Positions 23,796 to 59,500 of a DNA stretch of 64,000 nt are shown in pieces. Location: the IMG/VR virus record IMGVR_UViG_3300038463_000730, positions 62,001 to 126,000 of that record, one strand, 5' to 3'. Made by a program: the position numbers and the translations under genes. Each line of letters opens with the position of its first letter. Position 1 is the first letter of the stretch. The notes below the pieces were generated by a model. That model searched no databases. It saw nothing but the letters and a program-made list of their open reading frames with translations, and was not told the origin of the DNA.

Positions 23796-23805
23796 TGGAG
23801 AATAA

Positions 23806-40985: not shown

Positions 40986-41023
40986 GATCCGGTCACGGTC
41001 TCGACACCGAGACGAACGGATCA
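40986..41023 (-). other. intergenic stem-loop without a U-tract
   Basis: TGATCCG/CGGATCA outer stem and GTCTCG-ACAC-CGAGAC inner stem, starting at the helicase stop. Confidence 0.45.
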
Positions 41024-43964: not shown

Positions 43965-44001
43965 ACCAACCTATATAACGAACCGTTGCTTCCGTTACTC
44001 G

Positions 44002-44933: not shown

Positions 44934-44940
44934 CTTTTCC

Positions 44941-45362: not shown

Positions 45363-46718
45363 TTATCCTTTTCGTTTATCAATTACGTTATTCATCAGCT
45401 TACCAAATGATGAACGATTAGCTGCAACCTTCTCACGAATCTTTTGAGCTTCGTTAATAGTGTCATGAACGCCTGTGTCTAGATTCAATGTCAGATTACG
45501 AGCTGCGTCTTTTGTTCGGACGTTTTCGCTCAACGATTTGGATTCGTTCTTTAGTTGGGTGACACGTGACTCAGGAAGCCCGAGTCCGGCAAACCAACTG
45601 TAGATCTTGACTTCATCCGTACCATCTTCGATCGTATAGATACCCTTGAAAACGCCTTTCGGGTTTCCACACTGCTCGTTCACCATCGCCAACGCATAAT
45701 TCGTATGCATTGATGGAATCCGATCCCATACTGCCTTGGGAGCAGTCAAAATCACTCCGACATAACGCGATTGCGTCAAATCGAATCCTCCAGCTAACAA
45801 GTTTCCGTTCAGATTTTCCATAACAGCCTCAGCCAGAGCCGTTTCACCAACATAATTCTTGACAACCATCTCACCGTATACCGACAAACCTTCTCCATCC
45901 GTAAGCAACTTTCCCCACTCCATCGGATCCAAACCTTTTACGTCCGAAGGCATCGAACTAAGCGTGTTGAACATATCGACCGGCTCAACAATCGCACGGT
46001 TTGCTACCTTGTAGAAATCCAACTGGCTAACGTTCGAATAGATCGATTCGATCTTCGCATTATCCACTACGATTAGATTGTTGATCTTTTTCGTTTGTGC
46101 AAATTTCGAAAGCTTGGCCAGAGTCTCCAGAGCATTGTGTTTTGTCTGGGCGTCCTCGGCATTCATCGGTAGCGCCGCCATAACAGCGAGCGGCTTCCCC
46201 GTGCTGCTGAGAATATCGACCATAGTCTCGCAAGAACCAGCTCCAGAACCGCCACCCAAACTGATACATAGTAGGTTGACTTGTGCAGAATCCAGTTTCG
46301 CCGAAATAAGCTCGGCAATCGAATCTTTATGTGCTTCGGCAGCAGCATGACCAATCGAAAGTTCTTTGGCGGCTCCACCAAGACCGTAGTCTAATAAGAG
46401 TTTATTAGATTCTGGGACATCGATGAACTTCAAATCCTGTGTAGCCGTGTTGATAACGATCGTGTCATAACCGTTCTTGTAAAACGCCTCGGCTAGTCTT
46501 GATCCGGCTTGGCCAGAGCCAACCACTCCTATTCTGATCGATCGCGTTTTCTTTTCTACTACTTTGGCTGCCATATCTGCTTTCTGAGCAAGCTTAGCCT
46601 TCAATGCTGCTAGTTTGGTTGGGTCGAGTGCTTCACTATCTGTGTTTGTTTTGTCTTTTAAGTCGTCCACTAATTCCTCACGAATGTTTTCTGTTGTTAC
46701 TGACTTCGCACTCATCAT
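45363..46718 (-). CDS. tubulin/FtsZ-family GTPase (PhuZ/TubZ-like)
   Basis: GSGQAGSRLA, INTA..D, GGAAK, signature GGGSGAG, VVDN, T7-loop-like LDPME; start uncertain (46718, 46715 or 46574). Confidence 0.9.
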   Translation of the reverse strand: MMSAKSVTTENIREELVDDLKDKTNTDSEALDPTKLAALKAKLAQKADMAAKVVEKKTRSIRIGVVGSGQAGSRLAEAFYKNGYDTIVINTATQDLKFIDVPESNKLLLDYGLGGAAKELSIGHAAAEAHKDSIAELISAKLDSAQVNLLCISLGGGSGAGSCETMVDILSSTGKPLAVMAALPMNAEDAQTKHNALETLAKLSKFAQTKKINNLIVVDNAKIESIYSNVSQLDFYKVANRAIVEPVDMFNTLSSMPSDVKGLDPMEWGKLLTDGEGLSVYGEMVVKNYVGETALAEAVMENLNGNLLAGGFDLTQSRYVGVILTAPKAVWDRIPSMHTNYALAMVNEQCGNPKGVFKGIYTIEDGTDEVKIYSWFAGLGLPESRVTQLKNESKSLSENVRTKDAARNLTLNLDTGVHDTINEAQKIREKVAANRSSFGKLMNNVIDKRKG

Positions 46719-46732
46719 ATATCGCTTAATTC

Positions 46733-47695
46733 TCAGAGATTTAGGTAGAATTTGTTGTTTTGATACCACTCAATTGTGTTGGCAATTCCGTTCCGGAATT
46801 TGATTCCAGGGGTCCATCCCAGGTTCTTAATTTTCGTTGTATCGACAGCATATCTAAAGTCATGGCCGGGGCGATCTTTGACAAACGAGATCAAATCATG
46901 TCCCGCTCCCATTACTTTGCAAACCTCATGAACAACCTCAATATTGGAGAACTCCTGGCAAGCCGATACGTTGTACGTTTCGTTCGGCGGAGCTGACTTC
47001 ATGATCGTCAAAATGGCTGCACAGTTATCGAACACGTGGGTCCAATCACGCAACTGCAACCCTTGCCCGTAAACAGGGATCGGTGTCTTATCCATGATGC
47101 ACTTGACAATCTTGGGAATGAACTTCTCCGGCGTCTGGCGTGGTCCGTAATTGTTTGACGGTCTAACAATGTTAAAGGGTAAATCAAATGTTGCCGAGGC
47201 CGCTCGCACGAGCAGTTCGCCGGATGCCTTCGATGCTGAATACGGATTCCGAGGACCAAGTGGGTTGTCTTCGCTCCACGGCGCCTCGCCATCAGCAAGT
47301 TGACCATAGACCTCATCCGTGCTGATGTAGATCAGTCTACCAACCTTGTGTTTGACACATGCGTTGATGACATTCTGGGTGCCTAGAATGTTGTTCTTAA
47401 CGAAGATGTTCGGGTTCTCAATCGATGTATCAACGAATGTTTCGGCAGCACCGTGGATGACTATATCTGGATTTTCAATAGAAAATACGTTGTCCATAAT
47501 ATGGTCGTCGCAAACATCCACAATATAGAATTGGTGATTCTTGTTTGCGTAGACTGAGTTGAGGTGATTCTTTCGAGATACCCGATCAATACTAGTGAAA
47601 GTGTACGGATGCTTTTCGTAAATAGCCTTGCGTAGAAAATTCGAAAAGATGAAACCAAGCGAACCGGTGACCAATACTTTTTGTCTATCACTCAT
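46733..47695 (-). CDS. rfbB: dTDP-glucose 4,6-dehydratase
   Basis: VTGSLGFI, HGAAETFVD.SI, ISTDEVYG, PYSASK, SNNYGPRQ.PEK.IP, RDW, DRPGHDFRYA. Confidence 0.92.
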   Translation of the reverse strand: MSDRQKVLVTGSLGFIFSNFLRKAIYEKHPYTFTSIDRVSRKNHLNSVYANKNHQFYIVDVCDDHIMDNVFSIENPDIVIHGAAETFVDTSIENPNIFVKNNILGTQNVINACVKHKVGRLIYISTDEVYGQLADGEAPWSEDNPLGPRNPYSASKASGELLVRAASATFDLPFNIVRPSNNYGPRQTPEKFIPKIVKCIMDKTPIPVYGQGLQLRDWTHVFDNCAAILTIMKSAPPNETYNVSACQEFSNIEVVHEVCKVMGAGHDLISFVKDRPGHDFRYAVDTTKIKNLGWTPGIKFRNGIANTIEWYQNNKFYLNL

Positions 47696-47702
47696 ATCTT
47701 CC

Positions 47703-48032
47703 TTACATCCTGCTGAAAATTCTAAGCACTATGTCCAGCTGTTCATACAGTTTGTCGTACGTATCACAATAGATTTGCATGACAGATGACTCCTGCCATC
47801 CTTTTCCAGTAAACACATTGATCACGATGACATGCTCACCATAGTATCCAACGTCGATTGTATATCGGCCATTATGAACAGCCATCATGTCTTGCGACAG
47901 ATATTGATCTTCCATCCGTTTCGATTCGTCGATGTTCATGTTAGAATAGAACACCTCCACGAAACCTCTAAGGTCAATAGGTCTTGAATAGCTGTACGGA
48001 ACGGTCATGTCGTATGGGTTGGCACGAAACAT
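47703..48032 (-). CDS. hypothetical protein
   Basis: 109-aa ORF, TAATG overlap. Confidence 0.65.
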   Translation of the reverse strand: MFRANPYDMTVPYSYSRPIDLRGFVEVFYSNMNIDESKRMEDQYLSQDMMAVHNGRYTIDVGYYGEHVIVINVFTGKGWQESSVMQIYCDTYDKLYEQLDIVLRIFSRM

Positions 48033-48367
48033 TACTTCTTTTTTGGATACGTAACGTTCGCCACTGTAATACAGATCGATTTCTCAACATCCGGGCTACA
48101 ACAACCATCGCCGCACCCGCTGTAAGCTTCGGCTTCAGCCGTGAAGCAGATATCTTTTGTTCCAAACAATTTGGATAGTTTCGTTAGATGCTCAAACGTA
48201 ACCGTTTCGTCAAGACTGAACTCAAGACACTTCTGTTTCTCCATCCACTTTATGCCAGAGCTGTTTATGTAGCGAGCAAAAATACCCTCTAATTCTACGC
48301 TAAGTTGATGTTGAATTGTTCGTTGAGGCGACAATGTTTTCGTGGCTGGTTTTTTCTTGGAGGCCAT
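48032..48367 (-). CDS. hypothetical protein
   Basis: Likely start MASKKKP; YSGCGDGC motif. Confidence 0.65.
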   Translation of the reverse strand: MASKKKPATKTLSPQRTIQHQLSVELEGIFARYINSSGIKWMEKQKCLEFSLDETVTFEHLTKLSKLFGTKDICFTAEAEAYSGCGDGCCSPDVEKSICITVANVTYPKKK

Positions 48368-49178
48368 AGTTCGGATCCTTTTCATATGATTCACTATCGA
48401 CAATGTATTTATCTGCCCATTTGCTACGAAAATGTTTCACGTTGGATGACATGAATAAACGGTTTACCGGATTCTTGAGAAGCGTAACGGATTCGGCATG
48501 CAGGATATTAGTAGCCCCACAATAGATGACATTCTTAGCTGTCGCCTTCCTGATGGCCAGGCACAGATCAATATCCTCAAACGCCCACTGATATTTCTCG
48601 TCCATACCCCCGATACCACTCTTATTTTGAGTCCAAACATTACGATAGTCTCCGGCTCGTGTCATCAACACGGCTCCCGTTACGGACTGGAAGTAGCGAT
48701 TCTGTTTGGCATGATCATCTACCGTCTCACCGGCACGAAAATGCCACGGCATCCCACCCTTATGCGTAGGAAAATAGACTCCAGCATGTTGCAGTTTCTT
48801 CGGTTCATTGGTAAACATCAGTCGAGCCCCGACGACGCACGTTCGGTCATCAAGGCAATCAAGCATCGCCTGAATTGACCCGGTGTCTTGTAGAACAACA
48901 TCGTTGTTCAATAGCATGACGACATCGTTGTCTTCCGGAGCGGCTTGGTTGAAGATGTAGTTCATGCCTTCGGCGAAGTTCTGACGGTTGTTAGGATACT
49001 CATAGACACGGACATTAGGGCCCCAGGTCCGGGCTTCCTGAACCGTGCCATCTTCCGAACCGTTGTCTTTGATATGCCAGGTATGCTCGATACCTTCCAG
49101 AGCAGGCATGAGCGAGACCTTGAGGGTTCGTAACATACTGAGCCCGTTCCATGTCAGTGTCATCAGATGTAGCATCAT
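48300..49178 (-). CDS. GT2-family glycosyltransferase (rhamnosyltransferase-like)
   Basis: DNGSEDGT, NFAEGMN, LLNND, QHAG, VTGAVLM, FEDIDLC, HAES. Confidence 0.9.
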   Translation of the reverse strand: MMLHLMTLTWNGLSMLRTLKVSLMPALEGIEHTWHIKDNGSEDGTVQEARTWGPNVRVYEYPNNRQNFAEGMNYIFNQAAPEDNDVVMLLNNDVVLQDTGSIQAMLDCLDDRTCVVGARLMFTNEPKKLQHAGVYFPTHKGGMPWHFRAGETVDDHAKQNRYFQSVTGAVLMTRAGDYRNVWTQNKSGIGGMDEKYQWAFEDIDLCLAIRKATAKNVIYCGATNILHAESVTLLKNPVNRLFMSSNVKHFRSKWADKYIVDSESYEKDPNYGLQEKTSHENIVASTNNSTST

Positions 49179-49618
49179 TGTCCTTTTATCCAAGAGAGTT
49201 CCGAAGTTAGATCATTTCTCTTAGCCTGTAACTGTTCCATTTCATTTCGATAGATATCCTTTAGTTCTTCACGCTGGTTATCTATATCGAGGATCTTCTT
49301 TTCAAGTGCCGCGACACGCTCGGCACCACGTAACTTGTTCTCTTCGTAATACTCTTGCATCAACAACATATCTTCGTTTCCATCCTCGTCACGAGGAGGA
49401 AGAACGGTTACACATACATTACGATCCTTCACCACCATCCGGACTTCCGGGCGATGACCCGAGGCATAGATGATATCACCCGCGCGAGTCCGGCCAACCT
49501 TCTTAGCCGTGCTCATCAAAGCATGAAGGTCTTGCTCGGCGTGCCACGCTGCATGATCAGGTAGCCATCGACTAGCGAATTGTTCTACCGCATGATTAGT
49601 TAAGGTAAACTGTTTCAT
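49175..49618 (-). CDS. hypothetical protein (LTNHA..F..R N-terminus, C-terminal coiled coil)
   Basis: 147-aa ORF; N-terminal half resembles small RelE-like folds (weak). Confidence 0.6.
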   Translation of the reverse strand: MKQFTLTNHAVEQFASRWLPDHAAWHAEQDLHALMSTAKKVGRTRAGDIIYASGHRPEVRMVVKDRNVCVTVLPPRDEDGNEDMLLMQEYYEENKLRGAERVAALEKKILDIDNQREELKDIYRNEMEQLQAKRNDLTSELSWIKGQ

Positions 49619-49619
49619 G

Positions 49620-50627
49620 TTACAACCCCACAGTTAGTGTTCCAAGGAACAACCAATTAGCTCCAGTATCGAACCCGAGTGTAGGACCGAGATACAGGTT
49701 CTTCATCAACGGGAAATGCTGTCCGATGTTGTAACTAACCGGTGTCACAAGTAAGGCCAGATTACGGTTAACCACCGCATAACCAATACCAACATCCAAG
49801 AAAGTCCAATCCGGCGTCGTCTTCGACTCCCCGTAGGACATAAGTGAAACTGCCAACGATGGCACAACGTCAAAGTTATGAGCTGGTAGTGCGAGGCCAC
49901 CGCTGATACCCATGTAGAGACGTGGGTTCCAGAAAGACCACGAAGCAGCGGGAACTTGTTGTTCAAATCTTGAGGAGTCGATCGGAACGGCATATGTTTT
50001 CCCATCTGAGTCGATCATCATCTTGTTGTAGACATAGTCGCGATCATTCGCATCTTTGCCAATCACCGTAACCACGGTATACTTGCGTGGATAAACCTGG
50101 TAATCCCATGGAGTCGGGCTCCATGAAGAAAAAGATACTTGGCCGATCGGAATCGGAACCCCACCATCGGATACATCTTCATTAAGTTTAAGCTCTGGAG
50201 CTGTCTTGGCGTAGCCATAAGGGTCCGGACACGCCACAGACTTTCCATCACAGATAATCGACGGAGGAGGACCGGCATCGACATTTGTATCGGTACCGGT
50301 TGACTTGGCGTTCGTAACATTTTGACCAATTGTCGAAACCGAAACAACATTGATGCCATCTACTTTTGCCCCAAGCCCGTTTAGGTTATCCTGGATAGTT
50401 TTCAAGTTGACATCGTTTGCCGTAGCAAGACTAGCTATGTCCGCTTTTGTAGCGTAGCTGTCCTGGGCACGAATGACGTTGTTTGCTAACTGCTGAGTAG
50501 CGACGTTTTGATCCTGAATTGCTTTCTGTTGCTTGGCCAGATCAGTTTGCTTGACGATGATGAACACGATGCCTGCACTTAACAGGATCGCGATCAGATA
50601 AATTAACGCTCGTTCTTTTAGGCTCAT
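49620..50627 (-). CDS. membrane protein: N-terminal TM anchor, coiled coil, C-terminal amphipathic beta strands
   Basis: LIYLIAILLSAGIVFIIV; C-terminal alternating strands ending WLFLGTLTVGL. Confidence 0.7.
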   Translation of the reverse strand: MSLKERALIYLIAILLSAGIVFIIVKQTDLAKQQKAIQDQNVATQQLANNVIRAQDSYATKADIASLATANDVNLKTIQDNLNGLGAKVDGINVVSVSTIGQNVTNAKSTGTDTNVDAGPPPSIICDGKSVACPDPYGYAKTAPELKLNEDVSDGGVPIPIGQVSFSSWSPTPWDYQVYPRKYTVVTVIGKDANDRDYVYNKMMIDSDGKTYAVPIDSSRFEQQVPAASWSFWNPRLYMGISGGLALPAHNFDVVPSLAVSLMSYGESKTTPDWTFLDVGIGYAVVNRNLALLVTPVSYNIGQHFPLMKNLYLGPTLGFDTGANWLFLGTLTVGL

Positions 50628-51454
50628 ACTGCACCCCATTTAATGTGAAGATTGGCATCCCAAACTAGTTTGTCTGCCCATTTCTTTGTGAAGATCTGGC
50701 GTGCCTTCGTATACAAAGAAGCTGTATCGAGCGCCTTACTTGTCATCTTGCCGAAATGGGTGACCGGCACAGGAACAGTAGACATCGCTATTCCAGCGCT
50801 CATGGCTCGCATAGACAGGTCGGTGTCCTCAAAGTAAGCAAGGCCGAACTCACTAGAGAACGGCCCTTCATCACCAGGCAGGACCAACTTGTCGAAGACC
50901 TTCTTCGAACCTACCAAACACCAGCCAGACAAGTAGTCTACCAACGTGCCATCACCAAACACTCCGTCCTCTCGAACGAAGTTCAGAGCGGGGTTGAGGT
51001 GACCTACGGTTGGTCCGGCCAGTTCCCCTCGCATCGCTGCCTGAAACAGCGGCACGGTCCAGTTGTGGTGGTCCGAGCGAACTCGAATATCATTGTTTAG
51101 GAACAGGACATTCGGAGCTGAAGCCAACTTGTAGCCGCGATTGCATGCTTGAGCAAAACCGCGGTTCTCCGGAAGCCGGTGGTAGACAGGAGGATTGGCT
51201 GTCGCGATGAGCTTCAATTGACCAAGTTGGTCGTTGTTTATTTCTCGCCGATCTCGTCTATAACAAGCTTCCTCGTATTCACTCATCAAATCTTGATGAA
51301 ACGATGTCAGCTTCTCTTGCGTCTCGTCCGTGCTTCCGTTGTCCACGACAATGATTTCGTTGTCGGAACCAAGCCGGACAAGATCACGGAGGCAATCGCG
51401 AGTGAAATTGTATTTGTTCCAAACCGGAATGACGATGCTTAGGTTAAAATCCAT
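50624..51454 (-). CDS. GT2-family glycosyltransferase
   Basis: SIVIPVWN, VVDNGSTD, NRGFAQACN, FLNND, YFEDTDLS. Confidence 0.92.
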   Translation of the reverse strand: MDFNLSIVIPVWNKYNFTRDCLRDLVRLGSDNEIIVVDNGSTDETQEKLTSFHQDLMSEYEEACYRRDRREINNDQLGQLKLIATANPPVYHRLPENRGFAQACNRGYKLASAPNVLFLNNDIRVRSDHHNWTVPLFQAAMRGELAGPTVGHLNPALNFVREDGVFGDGTLVDYLSGWCLVGSKKVFDKLVLPGDEGPFSSEFGLAYFEDTDLSMRAMSAGIAMSTVPVPVTHFGKMTSKALDTASLYTKARQIFTKKWADKLVWDANLHIKWGAV

Positions 51455-51496
51455 AACCCGTCATGAACGAACGAGTGCCCGTATCGTCACGAACGA

Positions 51497-52582
51497 TTAG
51501 ACGCACAATTTCATGATTTTATCGGTAACGATTCGCCAATCGTATTGCTCGATAATTTGCGCGCTTGCTGCATTGTGATTCTTTTTGATCTCAGTGAAAT
51601 TCTCGTACAAATGACGCAGCTTCGAAACCGCATCGTCTACCGATGGGTAGAAATAACTCGTATTGATTTTTGACTCCCAATACAGAGCTTTTCTCGGAGC
51701 GTAATCTTCCTTGCCATCGATCAAGATCGAGTTATCCAGGCTCAAATAATCAAGCTGCCCGCCGAAGTTCGGCGCGACCACGACCAGGCCCGCGGCCAGG
51801 GCTTCGAGCCCAGGGAAGAAGAATCCTTCGGCGTGTGTCATCGTGAACAAAGCATCGCAGCTACGGTACAAGTCCTGAATGTCAGTGATAAACTCATTGA
51901 CGATCCGAACCTCAGCCTTTTTGTACGTCTGCCGAAACGTATCGTAAATGTCGTTGAACGAAACCTCAAACTGTTGCTCTGGTTTCTTATTCACAACCTT
52001 TAGGACGAGACAGACATCCTCATTTTTATCGAAGGCCTTTCCGAAAACCTCCAACAAGCCTGGAAGATTTTTCCTTACATGTGGCTGAGCGATATTGGCA
52101 AGGATCCTGAATTTACCCTTGGTCTTTAACGGATACGGTTTTGCATTTCGATATCGGTCCAGATCAATTCCATGAGGAACCATGGTCATGATGTTTTCCG
52201 GGACACCCGACTCACGAAAGATCTCGTACGCATATCGAGATGGCGGAATTAACCGGTCACAGTATTTGTAGAACTTGGTGAAACCTTCTGGTAGGGCGTT
52301 CTTACCTTTGAACTCGAAACACCAGATAGCTAGCCTGTTCTTCGCTCCATTAGCCAAGTAACGAGGAAAATTACCAGGAGCAGTATAGGTAAGCTGCGCA
52401 TCGTACTGGCCCGTTGGAACCTGTTTCAAAAAAGGCTTCAGATCTTCCGGAAGAGTCTTCTCTCCATCGGTACTAACCAGCTCTACATCGTGTTCCTTGC
52501 GGACTAATTCACGACTGATACTTTGTGCTACATGTGCCCAAGAATGGTTCTTACCGAGATAGCCTTGCCACTTTATTCTCAT
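51497..52582 (-). CDS. GT4-family (GT-B) glycosyltransferase
   Basis: VPHGID, RKNL, EGFFFPGLEALAAG (EX7E), GGQLDY. Confidence 0.92.
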   Translation of the reverse strand: MRIKWQGYLGKNHSWAHVAQSISRELVRKEHDVELVSTDGEKTLPEDLKPFLKQVPTGQYDAQLTYTAPGNFPRYLANGAKNRLAIWCFEFKGKNALPEGFTKFYKYCDRLIPPSRYAYEIFRESGVPENIMTMVPHGIDLDRYRNAKPYPLKTKGKFRILANIAQPHVRKNLPGLLEVFGKAFDKNEDVCLVLKVVNKKPEQQFEVSFNDIYDTFRQTYKKAEVRIVNEFITDIQDLYRSCDALFTMTHAEGFFFPGLEALAAGLVVVAPNFGGQLDYLSLDNSILIDGKEDYAPRKALYWESKINTSYFYPSVDDAVSKLRHLYENFTEIKKNHNAASAQIIEQYDWRIVTDKIMKLCV

Positions 52583-52606
52583 GCACGAACATATATCAGT
52601 TCCAGA

Positions 52607-53302
52607 TCAGGTCCACATCGTTCCTCGAACTTTGATCAAACGAATCAACATTTCATCTTCCATGTTCTTCATCTGATCACGCGCCTGTGACCAATCCTGA
52701 ACGAGCTTATGTCGCTCCTGAGATGTCGTAGCTTTCTCGCTCAAGTCGAACAAGCCATCGACACGATCCTCTTCGGTATGACGATCTAGTGTCCACCATC
52801 GATACAACGCCATAACCTCATCATAGGCGTCTTGTTGAGACCGAGCACCCATCGCATCGATCTCTTCCTCCGTGTGGTATTCACGAAGACTCGATGGTTT
52901 CTCTTTCTCTACGAAATCTCGCAGAATGGCAAAGTTCGCCAAAAGCATCCGGCCATCCGAGTCAATCCATCCGAATCGATAAGAATGTCGGGATGATTTA
53001 GTTTCACGGATATCGACGATGTGAAATTTGTAAGAGGGCAACGTGTGACACTGGACCCAATACCAAACGCGACCCATTCGATAGCCAATGCGACGAATCG
53101 GTCGGAATAATTTCGGAAGTGTTTTATTGAAGAACCATCGCACTGGAAATCGAACACGAACTTCTTTTTCCCAGTCTTCCCAACAGTACTCACTCGGGCT
53201 GATGAACGGATCAAAGTCTCGCATCTGCAACGCATTGCTATCGTGGCCAAGTGCTTTCGGCAACGGGAGCGCGAAATGTTTCTTAAAGAACCGAGACAGC
53301 AT
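52607..53302 (-). CDS. hypothetical protein
   Basis: 231-aa Trp-rich ORF. Confidence 0.7.
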   Translation of the reverse strand: MLSRFFKKHFALPLPKALGHDSNALQMRDFDPFISPSEYCWEDWEKEVRVRFPVRWFFNKTLPKLFRPIRRIGYRMGRVWYWVQCHTLPSYKFHIVDIRETKSSRHSYRFGWIDSDGRMLLANFAILRDFVEKEKPSSLREYHTEEEIDAMGARSQQDAYDEVMALYRWWTLDRHTEEDRVDGLFDLSEKATTSQERHKLVQDWSQARDQMKNMEDEMLIRLIKVRGTMWT

Positions 53303-53337: not shown

Positions 53338-56300
53338 TTACGGCAGTCCGAGAATATTCGCGAGCTGTGTCGAATTGAGCAACAGAACATTGTTGTTGAA
53401 TCCGGCCTTCTTCAGTAGAACGGTCACCTGAACCTTCGTATTCAACGTCTGAAGAATATTGTCTTCCTGAAGATGCGTAAAGTTCAACGTTAAGAGTCCG
53501 GTCGTGTAATCGATGTATACACCGATCGTGTCGTCTACAATGACTCCGGAGTAACCGTCTGTCGAGATTCCGGCCAAGTTTGGATAGAACGATTGCAACG
53601 ATACACTGAACCGGCACTGATTCAATTCCAACCCTGATGGATTACGAATGAATGTTCCGTCAGCGAATCGCATCGCCGGATAACCAAGACGAGTCGTACC
53701 GTTGCCATAGAAATCGGATACACAATCAGTGAAAATGTTGATCGTGTGTTCTTTGGCAAAGTCGATCGGTGGTATCTCAAGAACGATGGTTCCAACCTCG
53801 TAGTCAACTTTGAAGTAGTCACCATTCGGTACTACTAGTTGACCACCAACAACTATGTTTGATGGGGCAAAGAAGTCGTTCCGCCCCGGATCCACCGGAG
53901 TAGTAACCGGATATTGAACGAAGCCGTTCTCCGGTGGCAGAGGCGGAGGAGGAGGCGACGTCAAGTACGAGAACGTAGCCGGAACCGCTTTTGCGTTCGA
54001 TGTGCAGGCTACCAAGCTTGGCTGCCATGTCAACTGTCGAACTACCGTGTACGGGATCGGCGAGGCAACGAAATTGTAGCTTGCCAACGATGAATCATCC
54101 GTCATCAAATCTGGAGTCTGGTGTAAGATCGAATTACGATTTCCAGCTGTGCCGGTGTAGTAATCGTCATAACGTTCGTCATACTCTTCCAATGTCAATT
54201 CGACAATCTGGAATGTTGTCCCGACAATATTGCCAGGCTGACCGATGGAGTAACCATCGGCATAACTACTGATTGCGTTTACGTCTTGCAAATCGATAAT
54301 GAAATTGCTATTCACATCAGCTCGCATGAACGCGCGAATGTAGTTATCATCGACGATTGTTTTTTCGATCGCGATTGTGTGCAGATCAATTACTGATCCA
54401 ATCACGAATGTTCCGCTGTTTGTCGGATTGCTGACATCAGTCAACACAATCGGGTAGCCGGTGATATTCGGAATAGAAGTAAAGTCGAACGCGATGTCGT
54501 TCAATGTTGCGACAGATGCAGTATATCCATCTGTCAGCGCAACAGCAGCCGGTGCCAACATACCAACACCGCTGTATCCGTCAATCGTGAACTGAATAAC
54601 ATTCGAGGTAACGAATGGAGTCGTGTTAACTAGATACTGTTGGTACGTAGGTGAGGATACGAGTGACTGCCCGAGTAACACGGATCCAGCGACCGAGGCG
54701 TCCTCCTGGGTAACCGTTCCGTCGCCATCGACGTCCCCGTAAATCTCGGTGAACAACTGAGCCGAACCGACTCGATAGGTAGGAGAAGATGTTGGTGTCG
54801 TATTGACAGTGAACTTCGCATTTGTAAAGCTGCCGTTCAAAAGCGCTGTCACGAGCGCAACGTTATTGTACCCGTCAAGTGGATTGTTATCTACCTTGAT
54901 CAGTACTTTGTTCTTGTAGATACCGAAGTGGTAAAGCAAGAACGAAGATGGTATCGGATGGCCACCGAGCGTGGCCTGGCTGGAGTTCAATACCTTGACG
55001 TTGAAGTCCTGGATCGTTCCAACAATGAACGGTTCGGTTGTCTCCTGAAGCGCGGTAACGGTCTGGTCGAGCATCAAACTCAACTTCGGCACATACTGCT
55101 GCTTAGAGAACACTGGTTGACCGGTCGTCTGATTGTCCTGCTTGTTCGTCTGACTCAATACAGCTTGCATGACAGCTGTGTATTGCTGTGTAGTCGTGAA
55201 CGGTATGTTCCGTACGATGTTATCGATCGTAGCGCCGGTATTCGGATCGCTCGTTGTCTTTGGCAGAACCATTCCTTGCCCGGCATCGTAACCCTGACCG
55301 TCTGTAATCTTTGCTGCATCGTTGTAGATGCGGTACCACAACGTCTCGCCAGGAATATCTGTCCAACTTGTACCGTTGAACAACGTGTCCCTAGTATTGC
55401 TATTGGTTGGCTGGCCGGTTGGCATGACGAAATCGAACTGTTCACTCGTTGCACCGGAACGTTTCAATGTAAAAGCATAGTACGAACCAACAGTCAATGC
55501 TCCAGAGCCAACCGTCGTATTACTCAATACAAAATCTACCGGCTGTAGATATCCGTCCAATGTGATGCCGGTTGCCTGAAGTGAATTGAAACTGTAGCTA
55601 ATCTGTGCAAGGATGATGTTCGATGGGTCGTAGTCAATTGCAAGCTGAGGAACGATCTGACTTGAGTTCGAAACAGATGATTGCAACTGATAGAGTGTCA
55701 AAACAAGATTGTCATCAAAAGTATTGCTTGTTGACGTTAACTGCGGGGCACCGGGTGCTGGGTTTTGGTTCCAAATACCACCAGCCAACAGCACAGTTAT
55801 TTTCTGAATGTTGTTTGTTGTTGCCTGGAACTTAACTCCAAGCTGTGTCGTTACATCATTTGATAGAAGAGGACGTAGCTGAGTATACCCGGTCGAGATA
55901 TTGAGACTCGTAATATCGTAGCCCTGGCAACAAGCTGATAGCAATACACCGAGAGTAACGTAAGCTGGATCTAGATATAAATCGCGAAAGAATAGATTGG
56001 GCGATTGGTCTTGGGCAACACCAAGAATGTCACGAGAGATCGTGAACGCCGGGGCCTCGTCGATGATCAACGTCCCACCAAGATTAAACGACGTTCCGAC
56101 AATGCCACGCATATCGTTGAACAGAACGGATAGAACGTTGGCAAAATGCTTCGTACTAACCTGGACCTCATTGTTCCTGAAATAGAACGTCTCGTATTGT
56201 AAGTTACCTGCGAAGTCTAACCCGAACACGGCTACCTTGATCGCTCGGCGATCGAATGCCGCAGAGTTGGTCATGTTCAATCGTAACTGGACACCATTAA

Positions 56301-56547
56301 TCAGATCACTCGGCTGTGTTGCCGTGACAATCGGTTTGCCATCCAAGTTACCAACGACACTATCCGTGTTGAGTAGGATGTTGGGCGTGAGAGTGTTGAG
56401 CAGTACACCGGACCCGAAATGGTTGTTGACTACCGCAGTTACGGCTCCATCGTTGTGAGCCTGTTCCACCGTCATATTCTGAGCAGAGACCTGCTGAGAA
56501 TCAAACCATATGTTTTCTAACGTACTTACTGGTTGTCTTTGGGTCAT
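53338..56547 (-). CDS. large virion (baseplate/tail) protein with split dockerin-like Ca-binding repeats
   Basis: WFDSQQVSAQNMTVEQ N-terminus; GDVDGDGTVTQEDA and ADVNSNFIIDLQDV; follows the baseplate genes. Confidence 0.7.
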   Translation of the reverse strand: MTQRQPVSTLENIWFDSQQVSAQNMTVEQAHNDGAVTAVVNNHFGSGVLLNTLTPNILLNTDSVVGNLDGKPIVTATQPSDLINGVQLRLNMTNSAAFDRRAIKVAVFGLDFAGNLQYETFYFRNNEVQVSTKHFANVLSVLFNDMRGIVGTSFNLGGTLIIDEAPAFTISRDILGVAQDQSPNLFFRDLYLDPAYVTLGVLLSACCQGYDITSLNISTGYTQLRPLLSNDVTTQLGVKFQATTNNIQKITVLLAGGIWNQNPAPGAPQLTSTSNTFDDNLVLTLYQLQSSVSNSSQIVPQLAIDYDPSNIILAQISYSFNSLQATGITLDGYLQPVDFVLSNTTVGSGALTVGSYYAFTLKRSGATSEQFDFVMPTGQPTNSNTRDTLFNGTSWTDIPGETLWYRIYNDAAKITDGQGYDAGQGMVLPKTTSDPNTGATIDNIVRNIPFTTTQQYTAVMQAVLSQTNKQDNQTTGQPVFSKQQYVPKLSLMLDQTVTALQETTEPFIVGTIQDFNVKVLNSSQATLGGHPIPSSFLLYHFGIYKNKVLIKVDNNPLDGYNNVALVTALLNGSFTNAKFTVNTTPTSSPTYRVGSAQLFTEIYGDVDGDGTVTQEDASVAGSVLLGQSLVSSPTYQQYLVNTTPFVTSNVIQFTIDGYSGVGMLAPAAVALTDGYTASVATLNDIAFDFTSIPNITGYPIVLTDVSNPTNSGTFVIGSVIDLHTIAIEKTIVDDNYIRAFMRADVNSNFIIDLQDVNAISSYADGYSIGQPGNIVGTTFQIVELTLEEYDERYDDYYTGTAGNRNSILHQTPDLMTDDSSLASYNFVASPIPYTVVRQLTWQPSLVACTSNAKAVPATFSYLTSPPPPPLPPENGFVQYPVTTPVDPGRNDFFAPSNIVVGGQLVVPNGDYFKVDYEVGTIVLEIPPIDFAKEHTINIFTDCVSDFYGNGTTRLGYPAMRFADGTFIRNPSGLELNQCRFSVSLQSFYPNLAGISTDGYSGVIVDDTIGVYIDYTTGLLTLNFTHLQEDNILQTLNTKVQVTVLLKKAGFNNNVLLLNSTQLANILGLP

Positions 56548-56550
56548 TGT

Positions 56551-59500
56551 TTAGGGTTCCTCATATGTAATCGTAGCTCGCGAAACGGCTGGCTTTAGGG
56601 TATTTATCAGTGTTTCTAGAACAGATTGCACATCTTTGCTTCCACTAACAATGCCAAATGAATCAATGATATTGATCGAAAAATCGAAGATGCCGAAATT
56701 CTCGTTTTTGAGCAAAGCGTAGTTTGTATTTAGCTTCTGCACGGTATTGAAATCCAGCAAATAGGTCGTATAAAGGTCCGTTGTGACCGGGAATGTCGCG
56801 GCAACGTTCGCGTTATAGTTGACATCAATCGGTACGCCGAACGCTATGAATGGCTGTCTCATGATATCGCTAATGCGTAAATTATCGATTAAACAGTTAC
56901 CAATATTCTTCCCATTATAGTCTGATCCAATATTGAACTGGTTTACTTGATCAGTTGTTTTGATCGATGTAAAGATGGCGCTCTGGCCAACGAAAGACTG
57001 GCCAAAAACGATATTCTGACCGAATAGCAATCCCTGACCGTACAACACGTTTCCATGCTCAAACCCATCTACAAAGAGGTGGATCTGGTCATTCGTGCCG
57101 CCTGAGTTGACGGTCCAAGTTGCCTTGACGCGGTGCCATGTTCCGGCTTGCCAGAAAATAGGAGTCCTGACCTGATAGTCATTGCCAGCTCCACGAATAT
57201 CGAACGTCAAATACCCGTACGGGTCCTTGTAGATGCTGAGTCGATCGCCTTTCAATCCGTTCGGAATGTAAGTTACGATCACAGGAGTCTGCTCATTTGG
57301 CAGCGGGTCGGACAGATTGATTGTCTGCAAGTCAGAACTGACCGAACCTTGTCCACCGTAGTAGTTGTAGCTCTGATTTCCGTACTGAAGAGTGACCGAC
57401 ACAACCGTTCCGATCAATCCGGCAACCTGCACGGTCGCACGGTTCGTGCTGCTAACCTGTTCCGTTATGATACCTGAGGCATCGAAATAGAATCGGTAGA
57501 CTGGGTCGTTGTATGTATCGATGAACGGATTGGCCCAGAACTCGATCGAGCCTGGAGTTCTGGTGTTCAGAAGGCCGAGGTTGTCCACGGTCATCGGTTG
57601 TTTATCCAAGATCACGCTCTGACCGAAATTCGGATTCACACTGGAACCATACTGAAGCAACGAACGATCTGCGTTGATGTAGAACGGAGCCGAGTTGGCA
57701 GCCGTGGCATCATTCATTGTCAACAACGTGAGTGTGTTTTTCGAAATCGGCGGAGGATTGATCGAGTTGAACAGTTGGGTGACCGAGCCAGTCATCGGGT
57801 TGACCGCTTCACCGACACGGGTATCGGACAACATGATCGAATCGATCCGTACCTGGTCAACAATCGCATTGATCTGGTGGCTTCCAGACAAGTCCGAACC
57901 AATATAGGTTGACTTCATCAACGGATCGAACTTTGCAGCAAGATACGTTGCATAGGTGAACTGATACGTTCCCTGTGTCAACAGGTACGGTTGTCCAGGT
58001 GTTGGTGCGTTTTCGAAGAAGAACGTTCCGTTCTGAAGTCCGTTTCGAACAGTGGTTGTGTTGAGGATTTCGTATGGAATAGCGTTTGGGTATGCCGGTG
58101 GACTAGCCTTTGTTCCAAGGAATGTTGCTGGGAATGGCGTAGCAACGGTCAAGTTGTTATTGTCCTGCACAGATACAATTTTGTAGTATCCAGCGGCAGC
58201 ACCAGCATTCATCCCTGGAAAAATGTGAATGTAATTTCCAACATCAATCGGAGTAAACAATGCATTAGTATCAGTAAAGGTTGTCTGCCCGATCGTTCCT
58301 TCTGGAGTATTGCCCCAGAAGACCTGGTAGCTGTATTGGATGACAGGATAGTTTGGGCTCGATTCCGACACGGTCAAGTAATCTGTTTCGAACACAGTCA
58401 ACACGAATGCATTCTGATTCAGGTTGATCGGATTGTACTCGGCTGTGATCGAACTGACGCAGAGGAACATCGTTCCGGTATCGAGTGTCTCTTCACCAGT
58501 GAAGGTGAGTGGCACGGATTCATAACCCGTCGATGTTAATCCATCGATCGTAACGGTTACAGGGAATGTGACATTCGTTCCAGCCAGCCGTACTGATAGT
58601 TTCCGGCCCGGATCTCCACGTCCAACGTTCGAACAGCTTGTGTACCCATCGAAGTTTGTTGCGGTCCACAAATAGTAACCGTCATTAACCGACTGCGATG
58701 GATAGACTGCGGTCTCGGTCATGAGAAACTTCGTAATCTTGACATCCGACAAACTCACCGGAGGTGGCAACACGGTCTGCAAGAAATTCTGACAGTTGCC
58801 CCAAGCGTAGTAACGCTGGGTCACGTATTTGAAGTTCAATCCGAGCGGCTTGATCAGTAATGTATCTCCGGCCTCGGCGCCATTCGATAGAATAATCTGG
58901 TTGTAGCCATCACTTTCCGTAATCTCGTAATACGGAAACAATGCGCGGGGTCCAGGGATCTCCGTTTCAACTCCAGAGCGCAGAACCGTAACAGCAATGT
59001 TTTTGTAAAGATCAATTCTGGTCTTTACATCAATCGTGAGCTGGTTCACAGAGTAGTTTACCGATGTCAAACTCAATGGCATCGAGGCACTCAAAGTCAG
59101 TTGGTTACCATTTACGTTAGTAATGGTGTAGTATGTATCGAAGCCAATCTCCTGAATGTACAGTTTATCATTGACCTCAATTCCAGCGGCATCGAAGCTC
59201 TGTCCTGCCGTTACGATGGCCGAGCCAGCAATCGTGACCATGTCATCGCCTGCTGTGATGGGGCGCGTAATGACTGAGACAATTTCCTCCGGGTTCGGCG
59301 TGCGGAACCGCTGTCCGAAATTGATCGGAATCTTCGTTCCATAACGAATGAGATTCGGAACCTCCAACCCGTCGATAAACAGGTGGATCTCGTCCTGGCT
59401 TGACTGAGAGTTCAAGGTCCACGATGTTGCAACGAAGTGAGGTTGGTTCGATATCCAATTGCTTACGTCCGCGCTGACCTGGTATTGAGCCCGATTGTTA

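What the first reader, a model, noticed from the sequence alone, without database searches (positions are those of the whole stretch)
46733..52582. Phage glycosylation cluster (GT4, GT2, GT2, RmlB) downstream of the baseplate genes
Three intact GTs and a dTDP-glucose 4,6-dehydratase suggest assembly of a 6-deoxyhexose-containing oligosaccharide. The GTs have no obvious TM segments, and no flippase or GtrA/B-type genes are visible. That argues against O-antigen conversion and for a cytoplasmic acceptor, either virion proteins (see the DGY finding) or DNA.
Basis: partly seen in the sequence, partly recalled or inferred. Interest (0 to 1): 0.6.

Follow-up and report, generated by a model that had tools for sequence, protein, structure and literature searches.

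The report
Conserved glycosylation operon of huge phages
A 435-kb phage from peat carries, just after its baseplate genes, a conserved operon of three sugar-transferases, a membrane-anchored protein and a rhamnose-pathway enzyme; more than 70 related huge phages share it, it probably puts sugars on phage proteins, and what it actually modifies is untested.

Summary
On the minus strand, 52582 to 46733 encodes a GT4, a GT2, a second GT2 and an RmlB-type 4,6-dehydratase, directly after T4 gp25-like and gp6-like baseplate genes and two giant beta-rich proteins. One is a 335-aa membrane-anchored protein (MEM) kept between the two GT2 genes in 66 of 83 related loci. The order GIANT-p1069-GT4-GT2-MEM-GT2-RmlB-tubulin recurs in huge phages of about 420-480 kb. 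A promoter-like motif sits 15 nt before GT4 here and at -14 to -16 in 37 of 83 relatives, and shows no such peak before the internal genes, so GT4 to RmlB looks like one transcription unit. Elsewhere the genome encodes an RmlA-like enzyme and a plant/Mimivirus-type bifunctional 3,5-epimerase/4-reductase. This explains the missing RmlC and points to NDP-L-rhamnose. I found no ThyA-family enzyme and no C5-methyltransferase (the TET search was uninformative), no initiating phosphoglycosyltransferase, and no polytopic membrane protein among 1170 ORFs of 84 loci. GT content varies between relatives (GT2 pair lost at least 3 times; GT11/GT10 fucosyltransferase-family expansions). Best reading is cytoplasmic glycosylation of phage, probably virion, proteins (about 0.4). 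Host-envelope remodelling is the main rival (about 0.3). DNA is unlikely. The acceptor remains unproven.

The parts
51497..52582 (-). GT4-family (GT-B, retaining-type) glycosyltransferase; first gene of the unit and the one GT present in all 83 related loci (it was the query used to find them)
   Evidence: PF13439, PF00534 and PF13692 over cut-off. phrog_2170 E 8e-34. E252-x7-E260 motif conserved in 83 and 79 of 83 relatives. More than 500 homologues, the best 120 at about 45-55% identity, many on 420-480 kb contigs.
52589..52597 (-). Promoter-like motif TGATATATG in the 24-nt gap before GT4; the GATATAT core starts 15 nt before the ATG
   Evidence: GATATA[TG] lies within 45 nt upstream of 34 genes (3.4 expected), mostly 13-19 nt from the start codon. 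The same motif sits at -14 to -16 of GT4 in 37 of 83 relatives. There is no comparable positional peak before GT2a, MEM, GT2b or RmlB. The sequence is shown. Function as a promoter is inferred.
50624..51454 (-). GT2a: soluble GT-A (GT2) glycosyltransferase
   Evidence: PF00535 61.2 bits. DNGSxD, NND122 and ED210xD212 motifs conserved in about 80 of 85 relatives. No TM segment. The only annotated phage hit is a 'rhamnosyltransferase' at 29% identity.
49620..50627 (-). MEM: 335-aa protein with an N-terminal TM helix, a long helix, a Cys pair, beta domains and a C-terminal Gly/aromatic-rich six-stranded small barrel; role unknown
   Evidence: KD peak 2.96 at residues 7-35. 47% identical to the syntenic gene in L007. 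Present in 66 of 83 loci. AF2 pLDDT 76. C-terminal domain Z 9.9 to a designed six-strand barrel. Atlas structural leads are outer-membrane barrels with TM below 0.5. Profile search: 656 representative clusters, and the 150 best listed are about 330 aa except for fragments. No Pfam, PHROG or NCBIfam hit.
49175..49618 (-). p147: lineage-specific small gene inserted between MEM and GT2b
   Evidence: 70% identical protein at the same place in the closest relative L094. Absent from 83 other loci. No family hit.
48300..49178 (-). GT2b: second soluble GT2 glycosyltransferase (ATG at 49178 overlaps the p147 stop by 4 nt; the TTG at 49193 is the longest ORF)
   Evidence: PF00535 34.5 bits. 55% identical to the syntenic L007 gene. 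NND98 and [ED]D207xD209 conserved in 66-71 of 71.
48032..48403 (-). p123: ORFan; the longest ORF overlaps the GT2b 3' end by 104 nt, so the real start is uncertain
   Evidence: No relatives in 83 loci. No family hit. Coding status not established.
47703..48032 (-). p109: ORFan between GT2b and RmlB
   Evidence: No relatives in 83 loci. No family hit.
46733..47695 (-). RmlB-type NDP-glucose 4,6-dehydratase; last gene of the cassette
   Evidence: TIGR01181 345.3 bits (cut-off 365.1). Nine best PDB hits are all RmlB. T126-D127-E128 and Y152-K156 conserved in relatives, with a clade-specific NAD motif TG[ST]CGFIF. Median 60% identity to relatives against about 40% to the best cultured-phage RmlB genes.
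52607..53302 (-). p231: conserved protein of unknown function between p1069 and GT4 (detected in about a quarter of related loci)
   Evidence: 38% identical to the syntenic L007 gene. Cluster 13 in 22 loci. No significant family.
53338..56547 (-). p1069: multi-domain beta-sandwich protein, probably a peripheral baseplate or fibre component, with dockerin-like Ca-binding repeats in the family consensus
   Evidence: In 80 of 83 loci directly before GT4. AF2 pLDDT 75.5. Best Foldseek hits are phi812 baseplate chains at E 2e-5, then CBM-like and reelin-like sandwiches. Consensus YGDVNGDGIID.
56551..63246 (-). GIANT: 2231-aa T/N/S-rich protein with two ConA-lectin/Laminin_G_3-like modules, directly after the gp6-like wedge gene
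   Evidence: PF13385 E 8.5e-6, below cut-off. Sequence repeats seen. Syntenic in 75 of 83 loci.
63271..64000 (-). 3' part of the T4 gp6-like baseplate wedge gene (continues to genome position 129086)
   Evidence: phrog_6 E 5.5e-32. The next gene upstream is a gp25-like baseplate protein, phrog_2669 E 6.8e-7.
45363..46769 (-). Tubulin/FtsZ-family GTPase, always the next conserved gene after RmlB
   Evidence: PF00091 57 bits, TIGR00065 E 2e-20. Syntenic in 65 of 83 loci.

Best explanation
The interval is a self-contained, vertically inherited glycosylation operon (GT4, GT2a, MEM, GT2b, RmlB, plus lineage-specific small ORFs). It sits at the distal end of the baseplate/fibre module of a huge myovirus-like phage.

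Proposed mechanism:
1. An RmlA-like nucleotidylyltransferase, encoded elsewhere in this genome (host-supplied in some relatives), makes NDP-glucose.
2. The RmlB-type dehydratase of the cassette makes NDP-4-keto-6-deoxyglucose.
3. A plant/Mimivirus-type bifunctional 3,5-epimerase/4-reductase finishes NDP-L-rhamnose without an RmlC.
4. Three soluble Leloir transferases (one retaining-type GT4, two inverting-type GT2) build a short rhamnose-containing glycan step by step in the cytoplasm.

The most likely acceptor is a phage-made protein. My best guess is the neighbouring giant baseplate/fibre proteins or other virion proteins, glycosylated before assembly as in mycobacteriophages and giant viruses. 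GT content varies from strain to strain, so the surface glycan would differ between relatives.

Shown: gene identities, motifs, synteny, the unit-delimiting motif, the pathway complement, and the absence of export or DNA-hydroxylation genes. Inferred: the identity of the sugar, the order of the GTs, the acceptor, and the role of MEM.
For: - Gene identities and catalytic motifs.
- Position directly after gp25-like and gp6-like baseplate genes and two giant beta-rich proteins, same strand, with gaps of -4 to 42 nt apart from the uncertain p123 start.
- The same order in 54 of 75 informative related loci. GT4 is present in all 83, though it was the query.
- RmlB is clade-specific: 60% median identity, like tubulin (64%) and UvsW (58%). 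Composition is normal for the genome, so the cluster is an old resident and not a recent moron.
- A promoter-like motif sits at -15 of GT4 here and at -14 to -16 in 37 of 83 relatives, with no comparable positional peak before internal genes.
- RmlA-like and NRS/ER-type genes: 4qqr E 1e-34 and Mimivirus 7jid E 3e-24, against bacterial RmlD at 7e-4.
- None of 1170 ORFs in 84 loci has more than 2 hydrophobic segments. There is no Wzx/Wzy-like ORF and no Bac_transf in the genome.
- No ThyA-family enzyme and no C5-methyltransferase.
- GT repertoire is labile. The GT2 pair was lost at least 3 times. GT11, GT10, methyltransferase and extra GT2 genes are gained in a subclade, matched in relative G004 by Gmd plus further dehydratase-family genes about 23-26 kb from its GT4. 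This resembles giant-virus glycan islands.
- Precedent: mycobacteriophage capsid and tail-tube glycosylation by phage GTs next to structural genes (PMC12363180, citing Freeman 2023).
Against: - There is no direct evidence for any acceptor.
- The operon has its own promoter-like motif, so co-regulation with baseplate genes is not shown. No RNA data exist.
- The only non-enzyme conserved in the unit, MEM, looks like an envelope protein (TM helix, Cys pair, outer-membrane-barrel-like leads), which points towards the cell envelope.
- The GTs have no detectable sequence relation to the mycobacteriophage virion GTs.
- GT4, GT2, GT11 and GT10 plus rhamnose or fucose is also the typical toolkit of O-antigen synthesis.
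- Gene order in huge phages is often conserved without functional linkage.
- Relatives G001 and G003 carry RmlB as the sole sugar-nucleotide enzyme, so the final sugar there depends on the host.
Confidence: 0.4

Rival explanations
1. Host-envelope remodelling. The soluble GTs extend a host Und-PP- or lipid-linked intermediate (O-antigen, capsule, or a glycan later transferred to envelope proteins), and the host's own initiating enzyme, flippase and ligase are used. MEM, anchored in the inner membrane and reaching the outer membrane, organises or exploits this. The purpose would be superinfection exclusion, or masking of receptors during a long infection.
For: - MEM is co-transcribed by the motif evidence and conserved in 66 of 83 loci. 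It has a TM anchor, a conserved Cys pair and outer-membrane-barrel-like structural leads.
- A small EamA-type 4-5 TM protein elsewhere in the genome could be a lipid-linked sugar flippase of the ArnE/F kind (own knowledge).
- GT4, GT2, GT11 and GT10 plus rhamnose or fucose is the classical O-antigen toolkit.
- Iyer et al. 2021 read jumbo-phage sugar clusters as surface-polysaccharide modification (PMC7824862).
Against: - No initiating phosphoglycosyltransferase, Wzx, Wzy, ABC-2 permease, GtrA or GtrC in the genome, nor in 84 loci of up to 21 kb. Even the subclade-B islands with seven or more GT genes lack them.
- MEM and the GT2 pair are lost independently of each other.
- The cassette is core-like and tied to the baseplate module, not placed among early or moron genes.
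- The EamA gene lies about 266 kb away and its substrate is unknown.
Confidence: 0.3
2. DNA hypermodification. The GTs glycosylate a hydroxylated base in phage DNA to evade restriction, as in T4, RB69/DLP3 or the TET-GT gene clusters.
For: - Phage GTs of LPS or teichoic-acid ancestry have been repurposed for DNA, and such clusters can lie next to structural genes (bioRxiv 10.1101/2023.12.21.572611).
- Poly-arabinosylated 5-hydroxycytosine exists (PMC13326640).
- In 33 relatives an Fpg/Nei DNA glycosylase gene sits between GT2a and MEM.
Against: - No ThyA-family hydroxymethylase or 5hoC synthase and no C5 cytosine methyltransferase in a genome rated 100% complete. The TET/JBP search found nothing, but its control was silent.
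- Up to about nine GTs plus a methyltransferase in relatives is far beyond known DNA glycans.
- The Fpg/Nei gene is absent here and lies in a hotspot for homing-endonuclease insertions.
Confidence: 0.07
3. MEM itself, or another non-virion phage protein, is the acceptor. The operon would make a phage-encoded membrane glycoprotein that acts in lysis (a one-piece spanin-like bridge), in DNA entry, or in exclusion of other phages.
For: - MEM lies inside the unit between the two GT2 genes.
- Its linker is variable and rich in S/T/P in several relatives.
- Endolysin-type genes (Glucosaminidase, GH25) lie a few genes downstream in relatives.
Against: - If the bulk of MEM is periplasmic, cytoplasmic GTs cannot reach it without a lipid-linked route.
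- Subclade B keeps the GTs without MEM in the flank examined.
- At least six loci keep MEM without the GT2 pair.
Confidence: 0.12

Closest known systems
Mycobacteriophage virion glycosylation (Che8 gp110, Corndog gp38, Myrna; Freeman et al. 2023, as cited in PMC12363180 and PMC12582341)
   Same: Phage-encoded soluble GTs lie beside structural genes and glycosylate virion proteins in the cytoplasm. GT content differs between phage clusters.
   Different: No sequence relation was detected. The host here is probably a diderm, which is a lead only. This phage also carries its own NDP-sugar enzymes and a membrane-anchored protein in the unit. The genes sit next to baseplate genes, not capsid or tail-tube genes. 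The acceptor here is unproven.
Giant-virus glycosylation gene clusters (Mimivirus R141/L780 UDP-L-rhamnose pathway and fibril glycans; chlorovirus capsid glycans; review PMC9614988)
   Same: The virus encodes a 4,6-dehydratase plus a bifunctional 3,5-epimerase/4-reductase. The ER-like protein matches Mimivirus 7jid at E 3e-24 and Arabidopsis 4qqr at E 1e-34. Soluble GTs, a methyltransferase fused to a GT in a relative, and clade-variable glycan gene islands are also shared.
   Different: This is a bacterial virus. Its dehydratase is closer to bacterial RmlB (E 5e-71) than to Mimivirus 6vlo (E 3e-44). The nucleotide carrier (dTDP or UDP) is unknown.
Bacterial O-antigen / rhamnan loci (rmlBDAC plus WbbL-type GT2 and GT4 transferases)
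   Same: The enzyme families are the same and the GTs are soluble. GT content varies between strains, including GT11 and GT10 family (fucosyltransferase-type) genes in relatives.
   Different: No initiating transferase, flippase, polymerase, ABC exporter or chain-length regulator. RmlC and RmlD are replaced by one NRS/ER-type enzyme.
Temperate-phage gtrABC seroconversion cassettes
   Same: A phage-borne GT2 is linked to surface glycans. GT2a has a faint N-terminal match to phrog_841, GtrB-like (E 1.2e-3).
   Different: No GtrA, no GtrC, and neither GT2 has C-terminal TM helices.
Phage DNA glycosylation systems (T4 alpha/beta-GT on 5hmC; RB69/DLP3 arabinosyl-5hoC; MT-TET-GT clusters)
   Same: Phage-encoded GTs, sometimes several in a row, sometimes with sugar-nucleotide enzymes.
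   Different: The defining base-hydroxylating enzymes were not found.
rmlBACD operon of phAPEC8-like coliphages (e.g. ESCO13)
   Same: A phage-encoded RmlB, about 40% identical.
   Different: There it is a full classical four-gene rml operon beside RNR and PhoH genes, with no GTs nearby. Here RmlB is alone in a GT operon beside baseplate genes.

Membership tests
dTDP-glucose 4,6-dehydratase (RmlB, TIGR01181 equivalog) | Full-length score above the curated equivalog cut-off | tested here: not met
   345.3 bits against a cut-off of 365.1, full-length alignment 6-317 of 321. A near miss. The next family, LegB, scores only 133.7.
dTDP-glucose 4,6-dehydratase (RmlB, TIGR01181 equivalog) | Dehydratase-specific Thr-Asp-Glu plus the SDR Tyr-x3-Lys catalytic residues | tested here: met
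   STDEVYG (T126, D127, E128) and YSASK (Y152, K156) align with those of PDB RmlBs. They are conserved in 56-64 of 64 relatives.
dTDP-glucose 4,6-dehydratase (RmlB, TIGR01181 equivalog) | Canonical TGGAGFIGS NAD-binding motif | tested here: inconclusive
   The window has TGSLGFIFS and the clade consensus is TG[ST]CGFIF[SG]. The third Gly is replaced by Phe. The change is conserved, so it is probably functional, but it is untested.
dTDP-glucose 4,6-dehydratase (RmlB, TIGR01181 equivalog) | Activity on, and preference for, dTDP-glucose over UDP-glucose | not testable with these tools
   Needs an enzyme assay.
Glycosyltransferase family 4 (GT-B, retaining) | Pfam Glyco_transf_4 / Glycos_transf_1 domains over cut-off, and the EX7E motif | tested here: met
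   PF13439 37.7 bits, PF00534 30.1 bits, PF13692 30.3 bits. E252-x7-E260 conserved in 83 and 79 of 83.
Glycosyltransferase family 2 (GT-A, inverting) | Pfam Glycos_transf_2 over cut-off, and DxD-type metal/donor motifs | tested here: met
   GT2a 61.2 bits, GT2b 34.5 bits. The NND and [ED]DxD motifs are conserved.
gtrABC O-antigen glucosylation cassette | GtrA 4-TM flippase, GtrB with C-terminal TM helices, polytopic GtrC | tested here: not met
   No TM segment in either GT2. No polytopic ORF in the window cluster or in 84 loci. One unrelated EamA-type small protein lies about 266 kb away.
Wzx/Wzy- or ABC-dependent surface polysaccharide locus | Initiating phosphoglycosyltransferase and export/polymerase membrane proteins encoded with the GTs | tested here: not met
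   PF02397 is absent from the genome. No ORF with more than 2 hydrophobic segments among 1170 ORFs. No large Wzx/Wzy-like ORF in the genome. Use of host enzymes cannot be excluded.
Phage DNA glycosylation systems | Source of a hydroxylated pyrimidine: a ThyA-family hydroxymethylase or 5hoC synthase, or a C5-methyltransferase plus a TET/JBP dioxygenase | tested here: not met
   PF00303: 0 hits. PF00145: 0 hits. PF12851: 0 hits, but its control genomes were silent, so that part is inconclusive.
Mycobacteriophage-type virion glycosylation | Phage GT genes adjacent to virion structural genes | tested here: met
   The cassette follows the gp25-like and gp6-like genes, GIANT and p1069.
Mycobacteriophage-type virion glycosylation | Homology of the GTs to the demonstrated virion GTs (Che8 gp110, Corndog gp38, Myrna) | tested here: not met
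   tblastn of the three GTs against 50,697 phage records listed no Mycobacterium phage. GT4 hits Streptomyces and Rhodococcus phage GTs at 21-25% identity.
Mycobacteriophage-type virion glycosylation | Glycans detected on virion proteins | not testable with these tools
   Needs virions and mass spectrometry.
Eukaryote/giant-virus NRS/ER (UGER) bifunctional 3,5-epimerase/4-reductase (genome 264572-265471, outside the window) | Closer to NRS/ER and Mimivirus L780 than to bacterial RmlD, with no separate RmlC | tested here: met
   4qqr E 9.9e-35, 7jid E 2.9e-24, bacterial RmlD 8g22 E 6.7e-4. TIGR01214 rmlD scores only 57 bits against a cut-off of 224. PF00908 has 0 hits. JGI names some homologues '3,5-epimerase/4-reductase'. 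Activity is untested.

The most novel reading that the evidence does not exclude
A whole clade of about 420-480 kb huge phages runs an autonomous, giant-virus-like protein glycosylation system. A promoter-delimited operon anchored by one universal GT4 makes strain-variable rhamnose- or fucose-containing glycans, using a plant/Mimivirus-type rhamnose pathway. These glycans decorate the giant lectin-domain baseplate/fibre proteins. The uncharacterised MEM family (656 representative clusters) would be a new envelope-spanning or virion-borne partner of that system. Virion glycan coats would then be a convergent hallmark of very large viruses of bacteria as well as of eukaryotes.
Probability: 0.3. 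Interest if true: 0.75.

Novelty: new variant of a known kind. Interest (0 to 1): 0.55.

Why it matters
Virus-encoded protein glycosylation is established for giant eukaryotic viruses and, among phages, essentially only for mycobacteriophages. This report describes a sharply defined cassette that is widespread in one clade (83 related loci examined here) and evolutionarily old, in uncultured huge phages. It gives a concrete pathway prediction (NDP-L-rhamnose through an RmlB-type dehydratase and an NRS/ER-type enzyme), a candidate regulatory motif, and a list of candidate acceptors.

If the acceptor is the virion, huge phages would carry variable glycan coats on their host-recognition apparatus. 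That bears on adsorption, on recognition by hosts and grazers, and on the convergence between giant viruses and huge phages. If the acceptor is the host envelope, this would be a new, export-gene-free way for lytic phages to rewrite the cell surface.

Either way, the operon is small enough (about 5 kb of core genes) to be synthesised and tested in a laboratory strain.

Tried and rejected
- DNA similarity to 50,697 GenBank phages: none.
- Single-sequence scan of IMG/VR with GT4: nothing. The alignment-based scan then worked.
- Sequence search of PDB with the three GTs, GIANT, p1069 and the 196-aa neighbour of RmlA: nothing informative.
- PHROGs and Pfam on GIANT, p1069, MEM, p231, p147, p123 and p109: no significant family.
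- MEM fold searches (Foldseek against PDB and BFVD, VIA-wide, Atlas) gave only a designed six-strand barrel (Z 9.9) and weak outer-membrane-barrel leads. No function can be assigned.
- The profile search found a large family; the 150 best listed members are about 330 aa except for fragments, and the library holds no names.
- The T4 late promoter TATAAATA is not enriched.
- The sigma-70 and terminator consensus scan is not above shuffles.
- RmlC (PF00908) is absent. I rejected the idea that the sugar must therefore be a D-configured 6-deoxyhexose, once the reductase proved to be NRS/ER-type.
- RNA evidence: the only RNA runs offered hold none of the sequence.
- I considered and rejected the IMG/VR 'provirus' label as evidence of lysogeny. 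A relative has direct terminal repeats. I did not search for integration genes.

Full report
**Setting**

The window is positions 62001-126000 of a single 434,688-bp IMG/VR virus record. CheckV rates it 100% complete. Near-identical DNA occurs only in peat metagenomes: three samples from two studies hold most of the stretch, and three more studies hold parts of it. No RNA run holds it. No GenBank phage matches at DNA level.

**The observation**

All genes from about 26 kb to the window end lie on the minus strand. In the direction of transcription the region reads as follows.

| Gene | Coordinates | Main evidence |
|---|---|---|
| gp25-like baseplate protein | outside window | phrog_2669 |
| gp6-like baseplate wedge | 63271 to beyond the window end | phrog_6, E 5.5e-32 |
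| GIANT, 2231 aa | 56551-63246 | two ConA-lectin-like modules |
| p1069 | 53338-56547 | see below |
| p231 | 52607-53302 | no family |
| GT4 | 51497-52582 | |
| GT2a | 50624-51454 | |
| MEM | 49620-50627 | see below |
| p147 | 49175-49618 | |
| GT2b | 48300-49178 | |
| p123 | 48032-48403 | no family |
| p109 | 47703-48032 | no family |
| RmlB-like | 46733-47695 | |
| tubulin/FtsZ-like | 45363-46769 | |
| four further ORFs, then an HNH gene and a UvsW helicase | 42885-45360; 42569-42901; 41021-42514 | |

- Pfam, PHROGs and NCBIfam confirm the three GTs.
- The dehydratase scores 345 bits on TIGR01181, just under the equivalog cut-off of 365. Its nine best PDB matches are all RmlB enzymes. It keeps the Thr-Asp-Glu and Tyr-x3-Lys catalytic residues. 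Its NAD motif is unusual and clade-specific.
- The three GTs are the only GT2 or GT1 Pfam matches in the genome.
- None of the GTs has a TM segment.
- Gaps between successive genes run from -4 to 42 nt, apart from the uncertain start of p123. GC and GC3 are ordinary for the genome.

One correction: the interval also holds four further ORFs, and one of them, MEM, is conserved.

**Comparative evidence**

GT4 has more than 500 homologues, the best 120 at about 45-55% identity. Many lie on contigs of 420-480 kb. I collected 83 related loci: three from NCBI/ENA assemblies and 80 from IMG/VR.

- tblastn and all-against-all clustering show the order GIANT, p1069, (p231), GT4, GT2a, MEM, GT2b, RmlB, tubulin, UvsW on one strand. 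It is complete in 54 of 75 loci with enough flank.
- Homing endonucleases, a TnpB and, in 33 loci, an Fpg/Nei glycosylase are inserted between the conserved genes.
- p123 and p109 are unique to this phage. p147 is shared only with the closest relative.
- Median identity to the window is 60% for RmlB, 64% for tubulin and 58% for UvsW, against about 40% between this RmlB and the best cultured-phage RmlB genes. RmlB is thus a long-standing, vertically inherited gene of the clade.
- The donor, metal and catalytic motifs of all three GTs are conserved.

The GT content is labile.
- On a GT4 tree, the GT2 pair was lost at least three times while GT4, MEM and RmlB stayed.
- A second layout arose at least twice. 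It reads GT4, GT2a, GT2b, c19, GT2a, several GT11, GT10, Glyco_trans_1_2, a methyltransferase and a further GT2, with no MEM in the flank examined.
- In relative G004 with this layout, Gmd and two more dehydratase-family genes lie about 23-26 kb from its GT4.
- In another relative, GT2a is fused to a methyltransferase.

**Transcription unit**

A de novo k-mer search of upstream regions found GATATA[TG].

- It lies within 45 nt upstream of 34 genes, where 3.4 are expected. Most copies sit 13-19 nt before the start codon.
- One copy sits 15 nt before GT4. The next copies on this strand are before the HNH gene and UvsW. None precedes GT2a, MEM, GT2b or RmlB.
- In the relatives the motif peaks at -14 to -16 of GT4 (37 of 83). 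It is also enriched before tubulin and UvsW. It shows no comparable positional peak before GT2a, MEM, GT2b, RmlB, p231 or GIANT.

I infer a conserved transcription unit running from GT4 to RmlB that includes MEM. That the motif is a promoter is an inference, and its temporal class is unknown. Consensus sigma-70, terminator and T4-late scans were uninformative.

**The sugar**

- The genome encodes an RmlA-like nucleotidylyltransferase (TIGR01208, 195 bits). Next to it is a 299-aa SDR.
- This SDR is not a classical RmlD: TIGR01214 gives 57 bits against a cut-off of 224. Its best solved relatives are the Arabidopsis NRS/ER 3,5-epimerase/4-reductase (E 1e-34) and the Mimivirus UDP-L-rhamnose synthase (E 3e-24). 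Bacterial RmlD reaches only E 7e-4. Homologues occur on other huge contigs, and JGI names some of them '3,5-epimerase/4-reductase'.
- This explains why RmlC (PF00908) is absent. It predicts NDP-L-rhamnose made by a three-enzyme route of the giant-virus or plant type.
- A Gmd above its equivalog cut-off, and a LegC/PseC/Per-type aminotransferase, lie 6 kb further on. They hint at a second, GDP-linked deoxy-amino sugar.
- Two complete relatives carry RmlB as their only enzyme of this kind and have no nucleotidylyltransferase. The cassette can therefore lean on host enzymes.

**The acceptor: DNA**

The known routes to a glycosylatable base need either a ThyA-family enzyme or a C5-methyltransferase plus a TET enzyme (PMC13326640; bioRxiv 10.1101/2023.12.21.572611).
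- PF00303 and PF00145 have no hits.
- PF12851 has none either, but its control was silent.

**The acceptor: a self-contained surface-polysaccharide system**

- No Bac_transf in the genome.
- No large polytopic ORF in the genome.
- None of 1170 ORFs in 84 loci has more than two hydrophobic segments, even in the GT-rich layout.

The genome also has a 136-aa EamA-type protein with 4-5 TM segments.

**The acceptor: phage proteins**

- The cassette has a fixed position at the end of the baseplate/fibre module.
- p1069 models as a chain of beta-sandwich modules. Its best Foldseek matches are phi812 baseplate chains (E 2e-5), followed by carbohydrate-binding-type folds.
- The cassette behaves like a core gene set of the clade.
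- Its variable GT content resembles giant-virus glycan islands.
- There are precedents in mycobacteriophages and giant viruses (PMC9614988, listed).

**MEM**

MEM is the main unexplained part.
- It has a strongly hydrophobic N-terminal helix, a long helix, a conserved Cys pair, beta domains, and a Gly/aromatic-rich C-terminal six-stranded barrel.
- Structure-based leads are outer-membrane barrels, but all have TM below 0.5.
- The family has 656 representative clusters. The 150 best listed are about 330 aa except for fragments, and no named relative was found.
- It could be an envelope-spanning protein (spanin-like, or an exclusion factor), a virion-borne membrane-insertion protein, or the acceptor.
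- Because it is co-transcribed by the motif evidence, it keeps the envelope hypothesis alive.

**Verdict**

| Hypothesis | Probability |
|---|---|
| Glycosylation of phage, probably virion, proteins | about 0.4 |
| Host-envelope remodelling | about 0.3 |
| MEM or another non-virion phage protein as acceptor | about 0.1 |
| DNA | below 0.1 |

The enzymology is well supported, at about 0.75: a rhamnose-type 6-deoxyhexose and three Leloir GTs acting in the cytoplasm. The acceptor is not established.

I found no paper describing this cassette. Jumbo-phage reviews mention sugar clusters only in general terms, and a different large-phage lineage is reported to have core GTs of unknown role (PMC7824862, PMC12619734).

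I file it as a new variant of a known kind, virus-encoded glycosylation islands. It is of moderate to good interest because it is sharply defined, widespread and directly testable.

Noticed in passing
genome C1:264572-266232 (L005:8572-10232, minus strand), outside the window: An RmlA-like nucleotidylyltransferase lies next to an SDR whose best solved relatives are Arabidopsis NRS/ER and the Mimivirus UDP-L-rhamnose synthase, not bacterial RmlD. This is a eukaryote/giant-virus-type rhamnose finishing enzyme in a bacteriophage, and it is widespread on other huge contigs.
   Followed up: partly
genome C1:271909-274111 (L005:15909-18111, minus strand): GDP-mannose 4,6-dehydratase (430.8 bits, above its equivalog cut-off) is followed by a LegC/PseC/perosamine-synthase-type aminotransferase. 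They suggest a second, GDP-linked amino-deoxy sugar pathway. The flanking 272-aa and 280-aa ORFs have no family.
   Followed up: partly
genome C1:380062-380472 (L092:1062-1472, minus strand): A 136-aa protein with 4-5 TM segments matches the EamA/DMT family (E 2e-11) and sits in a tidy gene array. It is the only candidate small flippase or transporter seen in the genome.
   Followed up: partly
whole genome; in the window before 6162-6515, 25689-25979, 41021-42514, 42569-42901 and 51497-52582: The motif GATATA[TG] sits 13-19 nt before the start codon of 34 genes, ten times the expected number. Its position is conserved in relatives before GT4, tubulin and UvsW. It may be a promoter giving leaderless or very short-leader mRNAs.
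   Followed up: partly
window 53338-56547 (p1069) and relatives: The family consensus carries two dockerin-like Ca-binding repeats (YGDVNGDGIID..DL.LL). A JGI relative has a faint Dockerin_1 hit.
   Followed up: partly
related loci, e.g. L037:11841-12680, L009:15444-16322: An Fpg/Nei-type DNA glycosylase gene sits between GT2a and MEM in 33 relatives, often beside LAGLIDADG or HNH-like homing endonuclease genes. It is absent from the window, where p147 occupies a nearby slot.
   Followed up: partly
window 45363-46769: A tubulin/FtsZ-family GTPase with a TubZ-like C-terminal domain always follows RmlB in the clade. No check was made for a phage-nucleus shell protein.
   Followed up: no
whole record: IMG/VR labels the 434,688-bp record a 'provirus' cut from a 502,994-bp contig. 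A 451,956-bp relative has direct terminal repeats, and several relatives are rated complete. The provirus label may be a trimming artefact.
   Followed up: no
genome C1:269328-270131 (L005:13328-14131, minus strand): A Thg1-like tRNA-His guanylyltransferase gene (PF04446, E 1e-20) lies between the two sugar-nucleotide gene groups. No tRNA genes occur in the window itself.
   Followed up: no
window 12385-25659, plus strand: Four consecutive large Gly/Ser/Thr-rich proteins (1956, 876, 976 and 617 aa) with no family hits look like a tail-fibre set on the opposite strand. They are further candidate glycan acceptors.
   Followed up: no
window 42885-43964: A 359-aa protein has an N-terminal TIM-barrel-like region (faint GDPD hit) and a Pro/Ala-rich tail. 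It is conserved in a few relatives and preceded by CGTTATATAG. It may be a cell-wall hydrolase; relatives have Glucosaminidase or GH25 genes near this position.
   Followed up: no
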